64,000 bases of DNA, from positions 1 through 64,000 of the IMG/VR virus record IMGVR_UViG_3300023313_000001. The stretch is one strand, 5' to 3'. Position 1 is the stretch's first letter, and each line of letters begins with the position of its first letter. Of this stretch, positions 14,823 to 52,484 are shown in pieces. A model generated the notes under the pieces. It was not told where the DNA came from and ran no database searches. It saw only the letters and a list, made by a program, of their open reading frames with translations. The translations under genes were made by a program, and so were the position numbers.

Positions 14823-15218
14823 ATGAAATTAGTTGAAGTACACCAAAGCATCATCAACAAACAGGCATTTGATATGACTACCACCGGTATGCCTATGTAT
14901 GATAATATGATGCAAAATCGAACATACTTCAGGCAAGAAAAAGGTAAACGGTTTACATTATATAAAGACAGTTGGTCACCAGAAAAATATTTGCAACGAG
15001 CTGCACAAGGGTTTGAGAGTACAGTGCAACGACTTCAGGATACCCGCGATCAACGATTAATAGACAAATATGCTAAACAAATGCAATCTGGAGAGAAATT
15101 TCCGATATTAGTATTAGATTACTCCCACCGATTCACTCAAGAAGGTATCCATCGAGCGTTTGCTGCAATCAAAGCAGGAGTGGACATAGTTCCAGTACTA
15201 ACGGTATACTCAGCATGA
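14823..15218 (+). CDS. ParB/Srx-like domain protein
   Basis: FPILVLD...QEGIHRAFAAIKAGVDIVPV; likely start MKLVE at 14823. Confidence 0.6.
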   Translation: MKLVEVHQSIINKQAFDMTTTGMPMYDNMMQNRTYFRQEKGKRFTLYKDSWSPEKYLQRAAQGFESTVQRLQDTRDQRLIDKYAKQMQSGEKFPILVLDYSHRFTQEGIHRAFAAIKAGVDIVPVLTVYSA

Positions 15219-15607
15219 AATTAATGGAATTGAATTTAAATTGGGCAGATTCTAGTAACGCAGAGCGACCACACAACTTCGATAGCGAAGACTATACTTT
15301 GCTAATATGCAATATCAGTGATGTTTTTTCACATACTGATCAAGACTATCGGTTAGACTTAGACTCGAATACTGGTGGGTCCAACGCTATAGGAAATCGG
15401 TTGGATCGCGCAACACAACATTTTCAGAACGGTAATCCAATGGATCCTCCTGAAGTGGCGTATAGTGTACACACCAACAATATCACGTTCACTAATGGCA
15501 GACACCGATCGCTAGCTGCCTACCAGATGGGAGAAGAATACATCCCAATGTTTGTGTACTCTCCAACAATCGAGCAATTCAAAAAATTAGTGCGAACTAA
15601 ATCATAA
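15215..15607 (+). CDS. ParB/Srx-like domain protein
   Basis: PPEV...FTNGRHRSLAAYQMGEEYIP. Confidence 0.6.
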   Translation: MKLMELNLNWADSSNAERPHNFDSEDYTLLICNISDVFSHTDQDYRLDLDSNTGGSNAIGNRLDRATQHFQNGNPMDPPEVAYSVHTNNITFTNGRHRSLAAYQMGEEYIPMFVYSPTIEQFKKLVRTKS

Positions 15608-15636
15608 ATAGATTGATACGCAGTATGAGGATAACA

Positions 15637-16314
15637 ATGAATTTACTTAAAGCAGTACATTTGAATGATTGGTCTATGATAGACCAACTTAATGAAGCTC
15701 AGGCTCTCGAACCTCTTGAACTCCGCAAGGAACAAGAAGCAGTTATTATTGCACGTATCAAAAAATTAGCGAAAGATCCTAAAGAACAGTTCCCCAACGC
15801 TCTTGCACTAGTTCATCGTAGCTACGAAGAGCAAGAATGGGAACGACAAGACTCTATTGGTGATATAGTTCGTCCATCACCGTCGGACAGAAAAGCATGG
15901 GCTCAATATGAAGATATGATTAAAGTTGCAGTGAAAATGCTTAGCAAATTCCGTGGATCTAAAGGAGATTGGAGGTCGGATGCTTTTGATACCGTACCCA
16001 CTAATCAGCGAGCAAGCATGGGTAGCATGGCTGCAGCTAGAGTTAGTGAATCGACGATCCGTTCTAACTGGCAAAGTTTAGCAATGTTGAATATTGTTAT
16101 GGAGGCAGTCCACGATGATGATACCACTTTTAGAAATAATGGAGTATATGAAAACACAACATTAGGAGCGGTTGCTGATAGAGTTGTGGTAGACGCATCC
16201 GAACTTGGGTATATAGTTACTGAAGGAGCATCGACTGATGATAGTATATCATTGACGATATATGATGACCAATGTGAAGTTGTGGATTGTGTTAAGCTAT
16301 GTCTTCAAGATTAA
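15637..16314 (+). CDS. hypothetical late protein
   Basis: TAAATA upstream; LNE motifs; start chosen from GAGGA RBS (track start 15613). Confidence 0.6.
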   Translation: MNLLKAVHLNDWSMIDQLNEAQALEPLELRKEQEAVIIARIKKLAKDPKEQFPNALALVHRSYEEQEWERQDSIGDIVRPSPSDRKAWAQYEDMIKVAVKMLSKFRGSKGDWRSDAFDTVPTNQRASMGSMAAARVSESTIRSNWQSLAMLNIVMEAVHDDDTTFRNNGVYENTTLGAVADRVVVDASELGYIVTEGASTDDSISLTIYDDQCEVVDCVKLCLQD

Positions 16315-17684
16315 CAACAAACGAATTCATACGTAAATCTAACCAAAAACATTCACAGCGATACTGTTACTCTGAAACACAATATACCACCAGACAAAAT
16401 AAGATCACAATCATTTGTCCAGATCACGGCAGTTTTAAACAAACAGCATATCAACATCTACGAGGGTCTGGATGTCCAAAATGTGCTAAGGAAAAATTGG
16501 CAAGCCGTAAGCGCTTAACCACAGACGAATTTATCAAACGAGCCAAACAGATGCATGGTAATCGTTATGATTATAGTCAGACCAAGTACACTAATAATCT
16601 AGTGAACGTCGATATCATTTGTCAATCACATGGTGTGTTTTCACAACTACCTAACAATCATCTGAAAGGATCTAATTGTCCAACGTGCTCAAAATTATCA
16701 TCTATATCCAAAAAAACTTATACCACAAAAACATTCACAGACAAAGCTGCATTAATCCACGGTGGTAAATATTGTTATAGTGATGTTAAGTATGTTTCCA
16801 GTTCCACTAAAGTTTCCATTATATGTGAATCTCATGGGGAGTTTACACAACGACCAGCTTCACATTTAGAAGGATCTGGATGTCCTAAATGTGCTGGCAA
16901 TATAATGAATACTACCACCTTTGTGGAAAAAGCTAGGTTAGTGCATGGAGACACATATAATTATTCTACTGTCAACTATGTTAATAATACAACTCCCGTG
17001 AAAATAATGTGTAGTAAGCATCGTTCCTTTACACAACGACCAGCTTCACATTTAGAAGGATCTGGATGTCCTAAATGTGGGCTAGAGATATCAGCCACAT
17101 CCTCATTACTAACTACCAAAGAATATGTTATCAAGGCTATTGCAACCCACAATGCAAAATATGACTACACTTCTGTCAAATACACTGGAACATCCAACCC
17201 AATAACAATCACCTGTCCTGAACATGGTGATTTTGAACAACTCGCATCTAATCATCTTTTAGGACATGGATGTAAAACATGTGCTACTGAAAATCATGTA
17301 GGTTTTTATGATTACAATAGATTGACTACTGATCCTGATTTGATAGATTTGTCTGGTACCTGTTATTTGATGAAATTTACTGGCAGTGGTGAGACTTTTT
17401 ATAAGGTAGGTATTACTACTAGGTTATCCAAACGGTTTTACAAACATGTTACCGGATATGATATTGACAATATTGCTCAAGTCGATACATCACTGCTCAA
17501 TGCGTTTATACTTGAACAAAATATATTATATGTTTACTCTTTACAAAAATACAAACCAATGCACCAGTTCGGTGGACACACGGAGTGTCTAACTTTAACG
17601 AGTGAAGATGTGAATAGTATAATTGCTATATTTGCTGAAACTGTACATGGTGCGTCGCTGATCCCATTATTTGAAACCGGTTGA
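16299..17684 (+). CDS. homing endonuclease-like protein with five DUF723/CapR zinc-binding repeats and a GIY-YIG-like C-terminus
   Basis: Repeats of Y.YS...Y......V.I.C..HG.F.Q....HL.G.GCPKC; C-terminal YLM...FYKVGIT...R..F.GHTE. Confidence 0.75.
   Translation: MSSRLTTNEFIRKSNQKHSQRYCYSETQYTTRQNKITIICPDHGSFKQTAYQHLRGSGCPKCAKEKLASRKRLTTDEFIKRAKQMHGNRYDYSQTKYTNNLVNVDIICQSHGVFSQLPNNHLKGSNCPTCSKLSSISKKTYTTKTFTDKAALIHGGKYCYSDVKYVSSSTKVSIICESHGEFTQRPASHLEGSGCPKCAGNIMNTTTFVEKARLVHGDTYNYSTVNYVNNTTPVKIMCSKHRSFTQRPASHLEGSGCPKCGLEISATSSLLTTKEYVIKAIATHNAKYDYTSVKYTGTSNPITITCPEHGDFEQLASNHLLGHGCKTCATENHVGFYDYNRLTTDPDLIDLSGTCYLMKFTGSGETFYKVGITTRLSKRFYKHVTGYDIDNIAQVDTSLLNAFILEQNILYVYSLQKYKPMHQFGGHTECLTLTSEDVNSIIAIFAETVHGASLIPLFETG
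16842..17079 (+). repeat. identical 52-bp direct repeat (16842-16893 and 17028-17079) inside the endonuclease repeats
   Basis: TTTACACAACGACCAGCTTCACATTTAGAAGGATCTGGATGTCCTAAATGTG occurs twice. Confidence 0.9.
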
Positions 17685-17741
17685 CCTACCCAAAAACTAT
17701 CATGCATAATAGTCTCATTACTTAATTATGTTGAGACGTTC

Positions 17742-51770: not shown

Positions 51771-51777
51771 CTGTTTG

Positions 51778-51786
51778 GTATAAATA
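51778..51786 (+). promoter_or_regulatory. T4-like late promoter motif TATAAATA (example)
   Basis: Recurs intergenically at ~25714, 29529, 34294, 46514, 50545, 56816, with (A/G/C)TAAATA variants at 13803, 15605, 20323, 30401, 34731, 35503, 49491, 61231, 63139. Confidence 0.7.
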
Positions 51787-51810
51787 CCTGTTTAAACCTG
51801 GAGGCATATT

Positions 51811-52176
51811 ATGATCAGTAATCCTTTATATTACTATAAAGTGAAAGTAACACGTGTGGTAGACGGTGACACATTCCATGGGTTGATCGACTTGGGATTC
51901 CACATAACGCTAGACGAAACGTTTAGATTAGCGGGGGTGGATACTCCTGAAACTTGGCGTCCAAGAAATGCAGCTGAGCGTGCTCATGGAAAAGAGGCTA
52001 CCGCATTTGCCAAGAACCTACTCGAAGGTCAAACAGTTATATGCAAGTCAGTAGCCAATGGAAAATATGGTAGATATATAGTAAAGGTATATTTAACTGA
52101 CGGTGACCTGTCCGAGGACAGAACCTTGTCGGATATGTTGATTGAAGGTGGATTTGCTAAACGAGATACGTATTAA
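51811..52176 (+). CDS. thermonuclease (SNase-like)
   Basis: VTRVVDGDTF...IDLGF, RLAGVDTPE, GKYGRY. Confidence 0.9.
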   Translation: MISNPLYYYKVKVTRVVDGDTFHGLIDLGFHITLDETFRLAGVDTPETWRPRNAAERAHGKEATAFAKNLLEGQTVICKSVANGKYGRYIVKVYLTDGDLSEDRTLSDMLIEGGFAKRDTY

Positions 52177-52178
52177 CA

Positions 52179-52484
52179 TTATCGTCTAATTCTAGCACCT
52201 GTCATTTCGCTACCAGCATGAGGATTAAGATCTGGTTCTTGATCCATAATGTGCTTATCTTCATCCTCATGGTCTTTTTGCGATTCTTCGTTTTCCCCAA
52301 CAGCTAGTTGGCTATCAGCTCCATGATCTATAATCGACTTGACATCGCTTACCTCACCACAGGTGGAACACCGTACTGCAGTACTATGCACTCCATCCAC
52401 TTGCATATCAGTATCACACCATGGACATGTTCCATTTTCTAGCGCGGAAGCAAATCCAGGCCCAAACATTTCATGTAATTTCAT
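52179..52484 (-). CDS. hypothetical zinc-ribbon protein (MKLHE start)
   Basis: CPWC...CSTC; track start 52499. Confidence 0.55.
   Translation of the reverse strand: MKLHEMFGPGFASALENGTCPWCDTDMQVDGVHSTAVRCSTCGEVSDVKSIIDHGADSQLAVGENEESQKDHEDEDKHIMDQEPDLNPHAGSEMTGARIRR

What the first reader, a model, noticed from the sequence alone, without database searches (positions are those of the whole stretch)
14823..52484. Genome-wide family of putative capsid-targeting N-termini (MKLxE / LRxLAG...LxE)
Seen: many otherwise unrelated ORFs, several of them behind TAAATA motifs, start with similar short motifs: MKLVE (14823), MKLME (15215), LKRLSG..SLNE (20365), LRALCG (21867), MNLSQILQE (22238), MKLHE (22610 and 52484 on the - strand), MLLIE (23261), MNIQEILQE (29565), MNLTE (37686) and IRKLAG..LLTE (cassettes). 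ORF 22893 ends in LRKDAGL. Inference: two short address tags route diverse enzymes (ParB-like proteins, a kinase, a zinc-repeat protein) into the head.
Basis: inference. Interest (0 to 1): 0.6.

Follow-up and report, generated by a model that had tools for sequence, protein, structure and literature searches.

The report
Scaffold-tail-like head-targeting tag on phage proteins

Summary
The window is the first 64 kb of a 229.5-kb T4-related jumbo phage from a microbial-mat metagenome.

**Strong tag, Φ[RK]xL[ASC]G then [LIM]xE.** It has 8 strict hits in the proteome against 0.23 expected. Six lie at residues 6-10 of N-termini (20365, 21867, 30435, 34327, 34763, 35535). One is the extreme C-terminus of the scaffold protein.
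- Four carriers are cassettes sharing promoter, ribosome site and 21 codons, with identity ending at the Glu of LTE.
- The same tail ends the scaffold in 22 relatives.
- N-tag and tail profiles match (hhalign E 2.5e-7).
- Relatives carry the N-tag on unrelated proteins next to the prohead protease gene.
- Orthologues of 20365 and 21867 keep it.

**Short leader, Mx[LI]x[QE]ΦΦxE.** This T4-CTS-like class (22238, 29565, perhaps 22610 and 52484) has moderate support.

**Not supported.** MKLxE as such is compatible with chance (P about 0.23). The ParB-like pair, the kinase and the zinc-ribbon protein are not supported as cargo, and the ParB-like pair and zinc-ribbon gene are lineage-specific insertions.

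**Best reading.** The strong tag is a capsid-targeting peptide that copies the scaffold's tail and is cut off by the S77 protease. Targeting and cleavage are inferred, not shown. I rate it a new variant of a known kind.

The parts
20365..21867 (+). Tagged protein of 500 aa. The tag is MDIAHLKRLSGQPTSLNE| (nt 20365-20418). It has its own late promoter, GATAAATA, 35 nt upstream. It is first in a tight operon running to about 22873.
   Evidence: Four orthologues (P0010-P0013) all start MDIxRLK[KR]L[ST]GQ...L[SV]E. Their N-terminal 25 aa are 64-80% identical against 37-58% overall. XacN1 ORF218, RAS14 and Xoo-sp13 proteins at the syntenic place carry the same tag.
21867..22238 (+). Tagged Cys-rich acidic protein of 123 aa, starting MTNEELQQLRALCGQPRF...MLE|.
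   Evidence: The orthologue in contig L154 starts MTNEEIQKIRELCGQPRL...QLNE.
30401..30827 (+). Cassette 1: late promoter CATAAATA, ribosome site, 21-codon leader MLTLTEQNRIRKLAGMSLLTE|, then a 109-aa ORFan body.
34293..34734 (+). Cassette 2: TATAAATA (34294-34301), the same leader, and a 114-aa ORFan body.
34729..35506 (+). Cassette 3: the same promoter and leader with a 226-aa body. An internal PLLTE|MSTQSHP lies at nt 35165-35200, so it looks like a fusion of two modules.
   Evidence: (D1, D2). No homologue among 5.8 billion proteins apart from its neighbour.
35501..36290 (+). Cassette 4: the same promoter and leader with a 230-aa body that starts MSTQSHP. An internal PKLTE|M site lies at residue 146.
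22238..22606 (+). Protein with the short leader MNLSQILQE|, which is T4-CTS-like. It lies in the 20365 operon.
   Evidence: Orthologues start MKLNQILIE, (V)KLSQLKE and MKLRQLCE. There is no [LI]xE site outside the leader.
22610..22873 (+). Protein starting MKLHE|MQDM. This is a possible short leader with weak support.
   Evidence: The orthologue in L154 starts MKLQELFE|MQDF. There is no internal [LI]xE site.
29565..29846 (+). Protein with the short leader MNIQEILQE| behind TATAAATA, which lies 28 nt upstream.
52179..52484 (-). Protein starting MKLHE|M behind AATAAATA. This is a possible short leader with weak support.
22893..23261 (+). ORF ending IKE|AFKPGLSDDDKSQLRKDAGLD. It looks like a C-terminal copy of the tag but is not supported.
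   Evidence: It scores 0.7 bits with the core HMM. The gene is absent from relative L154.
14823..15607 (+). They are not supported as tagged cargo.
   Evidence: Neither has a late promoter of its own. Neither has a Pfam or PHROG hit. Both are absent between the orthologues of 14435 and 15637 in L152 and L153.
23261..23965 (+). DUF723 zinc-ribbon repeat protein (MLLIE). It is not supported as tagged cargo.
   Evidence: Pfam DUF723 at 2.6e-16. It has no late promoter and is absent from L154.
37686..38189 (+). P-loop kinase-like protein (MNLTE). It is not supported as tagged cargo.
   Evidence: Pfam AAA_17. It has no late promoter.

Best explanation
The LRxLAG...LxE N-terminus is a prohead-targeting propeptide. 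It consists of an 11-residue amphipathic unit (consensus x-R-L-[KR]-x-L-[AS]-G-Φ), then a few residues, then an [LIM]-x-E site.

The same unit forms the extreme C-terminal tail of the phage's own gp22-type scaffold protein, where an [LI]xE site lies 13-18 residues upstream. I infer four steps:
1. The tail is the part of the scaffold that holds on to a partner in the assembling prohead. The most likely partner is the inner face of the Gp23-type shell, as with the scaffold tails of herpesviruses and P22.
2. Proteins that carry a copy of it at their N-terminus are co-assembled into the prohead core.
3. The S77 (T4 gp21-type) protease then cuts after the Glu. This frees the cargo from its tag and the scaffold from its tail.
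4. The trimmed cargo stays in the head and may be injected with the DNA, like the T4 internal proteins.

The four cassettes are a T4 IP-like plastic locus. A conserved unit of late promoter, ribosome site and 21 codons sits in front of exchangeable ORFan modules.

Shown here: the motif, its positions, its conservation, the cassette anatomy, the late promoters, and a protease with an intact catalytic triad. Inferred: binding, cleavage, presence in virions, and what the cargo does.
For: **Motif statistics.**
- 8 strict hits against 0.23 expected, 7 of them terminal.
- A core HMM picks out the six N-tags plus the scaffold and nothing else.

**Cassette anatomy.** Four copies of a 118-nt repeat are identical from TAAATA to the Glu codon of LTE and unrelated after it. 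The protein bodies show no mutual similarity.

**Scaffold tail.**
- Own scaffold: ...ITE|GSLSAKDVAALRRMSGIR*.
- 17 relatives of the XacN1 group end ...LSE|xxAHLKRLAGIK* or similar.
- PA5oct, Atu_ph07, Vibrio 2.275.O, 121Q and fHe-Yen9-04 end the same way.
- hhalign of the N-tag profile against the tail profile gives 93% probability and E 2.5e-7.

**Relatives.**
- Unrelated small proteins directly beside the protease gene, the T4 gp67/68 position, start with the tag: MQFNLTRLKQLAGMTVVSE, MNRLRELAGVQLTE, MELARLRALAGLNE, MELTRLMQLAGI, and RsoM2USA MDITRLKHLAGVPLLE.
- Orthologues of 20365 and 21867 keep it.

**Protease and its sites.**
- Peptidase_S77 at 8e-24. His, Ser and Asp align with T4 gp21, PDB 5JBL.
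- The scaffold has 20 [LI]xE sites against 3-7 expected.
- The capsid protein has them only at residues 5, 31 and 40. E40 is invariant in the clade, and the site reads LLNE|TAAAGS beside the cassettes' LLTE|AAG.
- T4 gp23 is cut at LTE|A (together with PMC9958956).

**Late expression.** A-TAAATA lies 20-37 nt before 20% of genes against 3% of random sites, including portal, protease, scaffold and capsid genes. It precedes 5 of the 6 tagged genes.

**T4 precedent.** CTS leaders of 10-20 aa, and a 6-aa Alt propeptide ending ITE, target proteins to the core (PMC5694885, PMC9958956).
Against: - There is no experimental datum: no virion or prohead proteome, no N-terminal mapping, and no binding test. 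The phage is known only from a metagenome.
- The complex prediction could not be run.
- Published virion proteomes of XacN1 and RsoM2USA do not mention the tagged orthologues in the text held.
- Within this genome the independent N-terminal instances are only three, because the cassette leader counts once.
- The bodies of the tagged proteins are not depleted of [LI]xE sites (14 against 9.8 expected). Some may therefore be degraded core components rather than lasting cargo.
- T4 gp22 itself has no such tail, so the T4 analogy holds for logic, not for sequence.
- PA5oct and 121Q have the scaffold tail but no N-tagged proteins.
Confidence: 0.68

Rival explanations
1. The tagged proteins are minor scaffold or core proteins, like T4 gp67 and gp68. 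They help build the core through the shared tail motif, are then degraded, and leave the head. On this reading the tag is an assembly interface rather than an address for cargo.
For: - In relatives the tagged gene sits at the gp67/68 position beside the protease gene.
- The bodies of class B proteins are not depleted of [LI]xE sites.
- 34763 and 35535 have mid-protein LLTE|M sites.
- T4 gp68 ends ...ALKRRKALGLS, which is loosely similar.
Against: - Cassettes 30435 and 34327 have no site outside the leader.
- Four exchangeable ORFan modules behind one leader look like T4 internal proteins, not like conserved structural parts.
- The bodies are unrelated and found in no other genome.
Confidence: 0.2
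2. The shared N-termini are a by-product of recent duplication and gene conversion at the 5' ends, together with chance resemblance in 20365 and 21867. On this reading they have no targeting role.
For: The four cassette leaders are nearly identical at the DNA level. This shows recent copying, not selection on the peptide.
Against: - The peptide recurs with different codons and residues in 20365 and 21867 and their orthologues.
- It also recurs in at least eight unrelated proteins of other phages, and on every scaffold C-terminus examined in the clade.
- The identity between cassettes stops exactly at the Glu of the cut site.
Confidence: 0.04
3. The tag binds something other than the shell: the scaffold body (head-to-tail core polymerisation), the portal, or the protease itself as a substrate-docking exosite.
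For: - In T4 the CTS is said to take proteins to the core, and naked cores exist.
- The T4 head review calls the mechanism 'mysterious' (PMC9958956).
- Nothing in my data identifies the receptor.
Against: The argument is by analogy only. Scaffold C-terminal tails bind the capsid protein in herpesviruses and P22, and a protease site just upstream of the tail parallels the herpesvirus maturation site. That is established knowledge, not tested here.
Confidence: 0.3
4. The short MKLxE and MxLxE starts reflect the general make-up of N-termini (Lys at 2, A/T-rich codons for Leu, Ile, Asn and Glu) and carry no information.
For: - The max-triple test gives P 0.23.
- There is no significant link to own late promoters.
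- Carriers include a kinase, a homing-type zinc-ribbon protein and inserted ParB-like genes.
Against: - The wider pattern M.{1,2}[LI].E is about twofold enriched.
- M.{1,5}[DEQNS]ΦΦxE occurs 6 times against 1.4 expected and includes the protease itself.
- The late short-leader proteins have no [LI]xE site outside the leader (0 against 3.3 expected, P 0.025).
- Orthologues of 22238 and 22610 keep a leader ending in Glu.
- The gp67-position protein of Vibrio phage 2.275.O starts MKLVELFE, and its PA5oct homologue is annotated as found in virions by mass spectrometry.
Confidence: 0.55

Closest known systems
T4 capsid-targeting sequence (CTS) of internal proteins IPI, IPII, IPIII and Alt, removed by the gp21 protease
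   Same: - A short N-terminal leader is shared by unrelated late proteins.
- The leader ends at an L/I-x-E site.
- The genome encodes a gp21-type S77 protease, a gp22-type scaffold and a gp23-type shell.
- The genes lie behind T4-type late promoters.
- The carriers are exchangeable ORFans placed among tRNA genes, as ipI, ipII and ipIII are in T4 (PMC5694885; PMC9958956).
   Different: - The sequence differs: xRLxxLAGΦ...LxE (18-28 aa) against T4 MKTYQEFIAE (10 aa).
- Here the tag is demonstrably the same peptide as the scaffold's C-terminal tail, which T4 gp22 lacks.
- No experiment exists for this tag.
C-terminal capsid-binding tail of scaffold proteins (herpesvirus pre-VP22a with its maturation site; P22 gp8). 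This rests on my own knowledge, not on a tool result.
   Same: A short conserved peptide sits at the very C-terminus of the scaffold after a low-complexity linker. A site for an assemblin-fold protease lies just upstream of it.
   Different: Binding to the capsid protein is not shown here. In those systems the tail is not known to be copied onto the N-termini of other proteins.
Encapsulin cargo-loading peptides (my own knowledge)
   Same: A short terminal peptide directs diverse cargo to the interior of an HK97-fold shell.
   Different: Those peptides are usually C-terminal, have a different sequence, are not removed by a protease, and involve no scaffold. This is an analogy only.
Long propeptides of ejection proteins in phiKZ- and SPN3US-like giant phages
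   Same: Head proteins are processed by a gp21-related protease after a Glu in a three-residue motif, and the propeptides are thought to target them (PMC5694885).
   Different: Those propeptides are 80-130 aa long and have no shared short motif. Those phages have no recognised gp22-type scaffold.

Membership tests
T4-type capsid-targeting leader (CTS) with internal-protein cassettes | The same short N-terminal leader sits on otherwise unrelated proteins. | tested here: met
   Six proteins carry it. Their bodies share no BLAST similarity. A core HMM separates them from the rest of the proteome.
T4-type capsid-targeting leader (CTS) with internal-protein cassettes | The leader ends at the prohead protease site, L/I-x-E. 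| tested here: met
   The sites are LTE21, LNE18 and MLE28. Identity between the cassettes stops at that Glu. The capsid protein's predicted site is LLNE40|TAAAGS. This is met at the sequence level only; cleavage itself was not observed.
T4-type capsid-targeting leader (CTS) with internal-protein cassettes | The genome encodes a gp21-type (S77) prohead protease with its catalytic residues. | tested here: met
   Pfam Peptidase_S77 at 8e-24. The alignment to T4 gp21 (5JBL) keeps His, Ser and Asp.
T4-type capsid-targeting leader (CTS) with internal-protein cassettes | Late expression together with the head genes. | tested here: inconclusive
   A late-promoter motif, A-TAAATA, lies before 5 of the 6 tagged genes and before the portal, protease, scaffold and capsid genes. 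No RNA data exist.
T4-type capsid-targeting leader (CTS) with internal-protein cassettes | Sequence likeness to the T4 CTS, MKTYQEFIAE. | tested here: not met
   The class B tag is unlike it. Only the short leaders MNIQEILQE, MNLSQILQE and MTLDEILVE resemble it.
T4-type capsid-targeting leader (CTS) with internal-protein cassettes | The leader is sufficient to take a protein into proheads, and the processed protein is present in virions. | not testable with these tools
   This needs virion mass spectrometry or a reporter fusion in a cultured relative.
Scaffold C-terminal shell-binding tail | A conserved peptide lies at the extreme C-terminus of the scaffold protein. | tested here: met
   Found in the own scaffold and 22 relatives.
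Scaffold C-terminal shell-binding tail | A maturation-protease site lies just upstream of the tail. | tested here: met
   An [LI]xE site lies 13-18 residues before the end in the own scaffold, XacN1, RAS14, Xoo-sp13 and most IMG/VR relatives.
Scaffold C-terminal shell-binding tail | The tail binds the major capsid protein. | not testable with these tools

The most novel reading that the evidence does not exclude
In a large clade of T4-related jumbo phages (XacN1, RsoM2USA, PA5oct, Atu_ph07 and Rak2-like), the scaffold holds the shell through an 11-residue C-terminal tail, xΦxxL[KR]xLAGΦ. Phages of the XacN1 branch have copied that tail onto the N-termini of cargo proteins as a portable, protease-removable address. 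This would name the receptor logic of capsid targeting that is still called 'mysterious' for T4. It would also give a minimal peptide for loading chosen proteins into jumbo-phage heads.
Probability: 0.4. Interest if true: 0.75.

Novelty: new variant of a known kind. Interest (0 to 1): 0.62.

Why it matters
How proteins are chosen for packaging into T4-type heads is unresolved. The 2023 T4 head review says the mechanism 'remains mysterious' (PMC9958956).

A tag that is recognisably the scaffold's own terminal peptide gives a concrete hypothesis that can be tested directly: cargo and scaffold compete for one site.

It also marks a set of ORFan proteins as probable injected proteins. Those are the usual place to find anti-defence functions, as with T4 IPI.

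Finally, it offers a short sequence rule for finding such proteins in metagenomic jumbo phages.

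Tried and rejected
**Searches for close relatives**
- Near-identical DNA in the phage collection: no match.
- tblastn of a cassette protein and of the 25-aa leader against phages: no match.
- Back-translated leader pattern in IMG/VR and in metagenome contigs: no match.
- Neighbour-gene loci from IMG/VR (L081-L089): no tags, too distant.
- PA5oct and 121Q whole genomes: scaffold tail present but no N-terminal tags. The one PA5oct hit is internal to the virion protein gp249.

**Function of the tagged proteins**
- Pfam and PHROGs: nothing.
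- ESM Atlas for 20365 and 35535: only low-confidence models and no usable lead.
- AlphaFold2 on the five-sequence alignment of the 20365 family: mean pLDDT 40. Only residues 300-390, a beta domain, are modelled. I did not take it to a fold search.

- Read laying was not used, because the only holder is the source metagenome kept as contigs.
- The large representative-protein search was not used.

**Literature**
- Searches for the motif strings found nothing relevant.
- The XacN1 and RsoM2USA papers do not name the tagged orthologues among virion proteins in the text held.

**Ideas rejected**
- MKLxE as a motif of its own.
- ORF 22893 as a carrier of a C-terminal tag.
- The ParB-like pair, the kinase and DUF723 as tagged cargo.

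Full report
**What the window is.** The window is bases 1-64,000 of a single 229,507-bp contig. The contig is held by one microbial-mat metagenome. Outside the window it encodes four T4-type head proteins:
- a portal (Pfam Portal_T4, 1e-93);
- a prohead protease (Peptidase_S77, 8e-24);
- a coiled-coil scaffold;
- a Gp23 major capsid protein (7e-95).

The nearest cultured phages by capsid protein, at 50-60% identity, are Xanthomonas phages Xoo-sp13 and XacN1, Stenotrophomonas phages CM1 and RAS14, and Ralstonia phage RsoM2USA. Rak2-like phages and PA5oct are further off.

The motif A-TAAATA lies 20-37 nt before 20% of start codons, against 3% of random positions. It precedes the portal, protease, scaffold and capsid genes. 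I therefore accept it as a marker of T4-type late promoters.

**The observation.** The list mixes three things of very different weight.

**(1) The LRxLAG...LxE tag is real.** The pattern [LIM][RK][RKA][LM][ASC]G occurs 8 times in 70,575 residues, against 0.23 in shuffled proteomes.
- Six hits lie at residues 6-10 of N-termini: 20365, 21867, 30435, 34327, 34763 and 35535.
- One hit is two residues from the C-terminus of the scaffold.
- One hit is internal.

A core HMM finds these seven at E <= 0.005, and the next protein at E 0.37.

The four cassettes share a 118-nt repeat. They are identical from TAAATA through the ribosome site and 21 codons (MLTLTEQNRIRKLAGMPLLTE). Identity stops exactly at the Glu codon. 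Cassette 34327 has a perfect TATAAATA.

The protein bodies are unrelated to each other. They have no Pfam or PHROG family. For 34763 there is no relative among 5.8 billion proteins other than its neighbour.

**(2) The same peptide ends the scaffold protein.** The own scaffold ends ...ITE|GSLSAKDVAALRRMSGIR.
- All 17 complete scaffolds of the XacN1 branch end ...L[ST]E|xxxAHLKRLAGIK or a close variant.
- So do PA5oct (EELRRLAGIK), Atu_ph07 (DLKRLAGIKK), Vibrio phage 2.275.O (RLTKIAGIRK), 121Q (ELDVLSGINKK) and fHe-Yen9-04 (ISRYAGIKKKR).
- T4 gp22 does not.
- A profile of ten N-tags aligns with a profile of thirteen scaffold tails at 93% probability and E 2.5e-7 over 13 columns.

**(3) The N-tag is conserved on varied proteins in relatives.** In IMG/VR relatives, unrelated small proteins encoded right before the protease gene, behind TAAATA, carry it:
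- MQFNLTRLKQLAGMTVVSE
- MNRLRELAGVQLTE
- MELTRLMQLAGI
- MELARLRALAGLNE

Other carriers are:
- in RsoM2USA, the gene right after the protease gene (MDITRLKHLAGVPLLE);
- XacN1 ORF218, and the RAS14 and Xoo-sp13 proteins downstream of the spanin-like genes. This is the place syntenic with 20365.

Four orthologues of 20365 from other metagenomes all start MDIxRLK[KR]L[ST]GQ...L[SV]E, and that N-terminus is their best-conserved block. The orthologue of 21867 keeps IRELCGQ. In those contigs, and in four whole relatives' genomes, the motif is essentially confined to protein ends.

**The protease and its sites.** The S77 protease keeps the His, Ser and Asp that align with T4 gp21.
- [LI]xE sites number 20 in the 312-aa scaffold, where 3-7 are expected.
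- In the capsid protein they occur only at residues 5, 31 and 40. E40 is invariant across the clade.
- Alignment to mature T4 gp23* places the maturation site at LLNE40|TAAAGS.
- The cassettes read LLTE|AAG.
- A 72-aa late protein outside the window (87296) reads MTLDEILVE|TAAAGS.
- T4 gp23 reads FLTE|AEIGG.

**The short leaders.** MKLxE as such does not stand. The commonest N-terminal triple (K2, L3, E5; four genes) is matched in 23% of column shuffles.

Its carriers have no late promoter of their own:
- The ParB-like pair (14823, 15215) has no Pfam or PHROG support and is absent at that locus in the closest contigs.
- The DUF723 zinc-ribbon gene (23261) is likewise absent there.
- The kinase (37686) was not covered by those contigs.

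A narrower class does have moderate support. The pattern M.{1,5}[DEQNS]ΦΦxE occurs 6 times against 1.4 expected (P 0.003, chosen post hoc). The hits are 22238, 29565, 87296, 211339, the protease itself and 173505. Supporting points:
- Four of the six have late promoters.
- 22238, 22610, 29565, 52179 and 87296 have no [LI]xE outside the leader: 0 against 3.3 expected (P 0.025).
- Orthologues of 22238 start MKLNQILIE, KLSQLKE and MKLRQLCE. The orthologue of 22610 starts MKLQELFE|MQDF, against own MKLHE|MQDM.

These leaders resemble the T4 CTS (MKTYQEFIAE|A) and the N-termini of both scaffolds (T4 MLKEQLIAE|A; own MDELLKKLLE|AE). T4 Alt has a six-residue propeptide ending ITE (PMC5694885). So leaders this short do have a precedent.

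**Mechanism.** The best-supported reading is a T4-style capsid-targeting propeptide whose recognition element is a copy of the scaffold's terminal tail. Scaffold and cargo would use the same contact in the prohead. The S77 protease would then release both.

The receptor is not identified. I favour the inner face of the capsid protein, by analogy with the scaffold tails of herpesviruses and P22. That rests on my own knowledge, and the one tool that could have tested it was unavailable.

Whether the tagged proteins persist as injected cargo or are degraded as core parts is also open. The two small cassettes have no internal site. The two large ones each have a mid-protein LLTE|M or KLTE|M site. 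ORF 34763 carries an internal copy of the leader end plus the first residues of mature 35535 (D2), which points to module shuffling at the leader.

**Comparison and novelty.** This works like the T4 CTS and internal-protein system. It meets that system's sequence-level criteria except likeness to the T4 CTS itself. The experimental criteria cannot be tested here.

I found no paper that describes the conserved scaffold tail or its reuse as an N-terminal tag. The T4 head review calls core localisation 'mysterious'. I therefore rate the finding a new variant of a known kind, of moderate to high interest.

**Limits.**
- Gene calls are my own simple ORF caller, with two starts corrected by hand.
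- Several patterns were defined after seeing the data, and I say so where it applies.
- No expression or protein data exist for this phage.

Noticed in passing
window 50655-50980: A permuted (two-piece) tmRNA gene (Rfam tmRNA_permuted, 114.6 bits). ARAGORN reads the tag peptide as ANDNFFATAIAA. This is unusual cargo for a phage and may hint at the host group.
   Followed up: partly
window 640-717: A tRNA with a CUA anticodon, which ARAGORN labels tRNA-Pyl. It is a possible amber suppressor. It stands apart from the main cluster of 18 tRNA genes at 24.5-50.5 kb.
   Followed up: no
window 24500-37400: The four tagged cassettes lie among the tRNA genes. In T4, ipI and ipII/ipIII likewise flank the tRNA cluster.
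   Followed up: partly
window 35165-35200: ORF 34763 holds an internal copy of PLLTEMSTQSHP, which is the end of the leader plus the first residues of mature 35535. ORF 35535 has PKLTE|MADP at residue 146. Both large cassettes look like two modules joined at a cleavage site.
   Followed up: partly
G000:C1:154686-155624 and 155662-157041 (outside the window): The scaffold has 20 [LI]xE sites in 312 aa. The capsid protein has three, all within its first 40 residues. This is a clear signature of the protease's specificity.
   Followed up: yes
L111 and L112 (phage T4): The T4 gp22 N-terminus (MLKEQLIAE|A) resembles the T4 IPII/IPIII targeting sequence (MKTYQEFIAE|A). T4 gp68 ends ...ALKRRKALGLS, loosely like the tail motif found here.
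   Followed up: no
window 38264-39864: A 6-pyruvoyl-tetrahydropterin synthase family gene and a GTP cyclohydrolase I gene. Together they suggest a 7-deazaguanine or queuosine-type pathway, possibly for DNA modification.
   Followed up: no
window 16299-17684 and 23261-23965: Zinc-ribbon repeat proteins (DUF723, one with T5orf172) that have many paralogues across the genome. Gene 23261 is missing from the closest relative at that locus, so it behaves like a mobile, homing-type gene.
   Followed up: partly
window 13814-14821: A late operon made of a coiled-coil protein, a membrane protein and a lipoprotein (weak Rz-like spanin hit). It is conserved upstream of the tagged gene in XacN1, RAS14 and the metagenome relatives.
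   Followed up: partly
G000:C1:87296-87514 and 211339-212229 (outside the window): Two further late proteins with leader-like starts: MTLDEILVE|TAAAGS, which has the same residues as the capsid protein after its cut site, and MSSILSQLITE|LAGG. The second has C-terminal homologues in XacN1, RAS14 and Xoo-sp13.
   Followed up: partly
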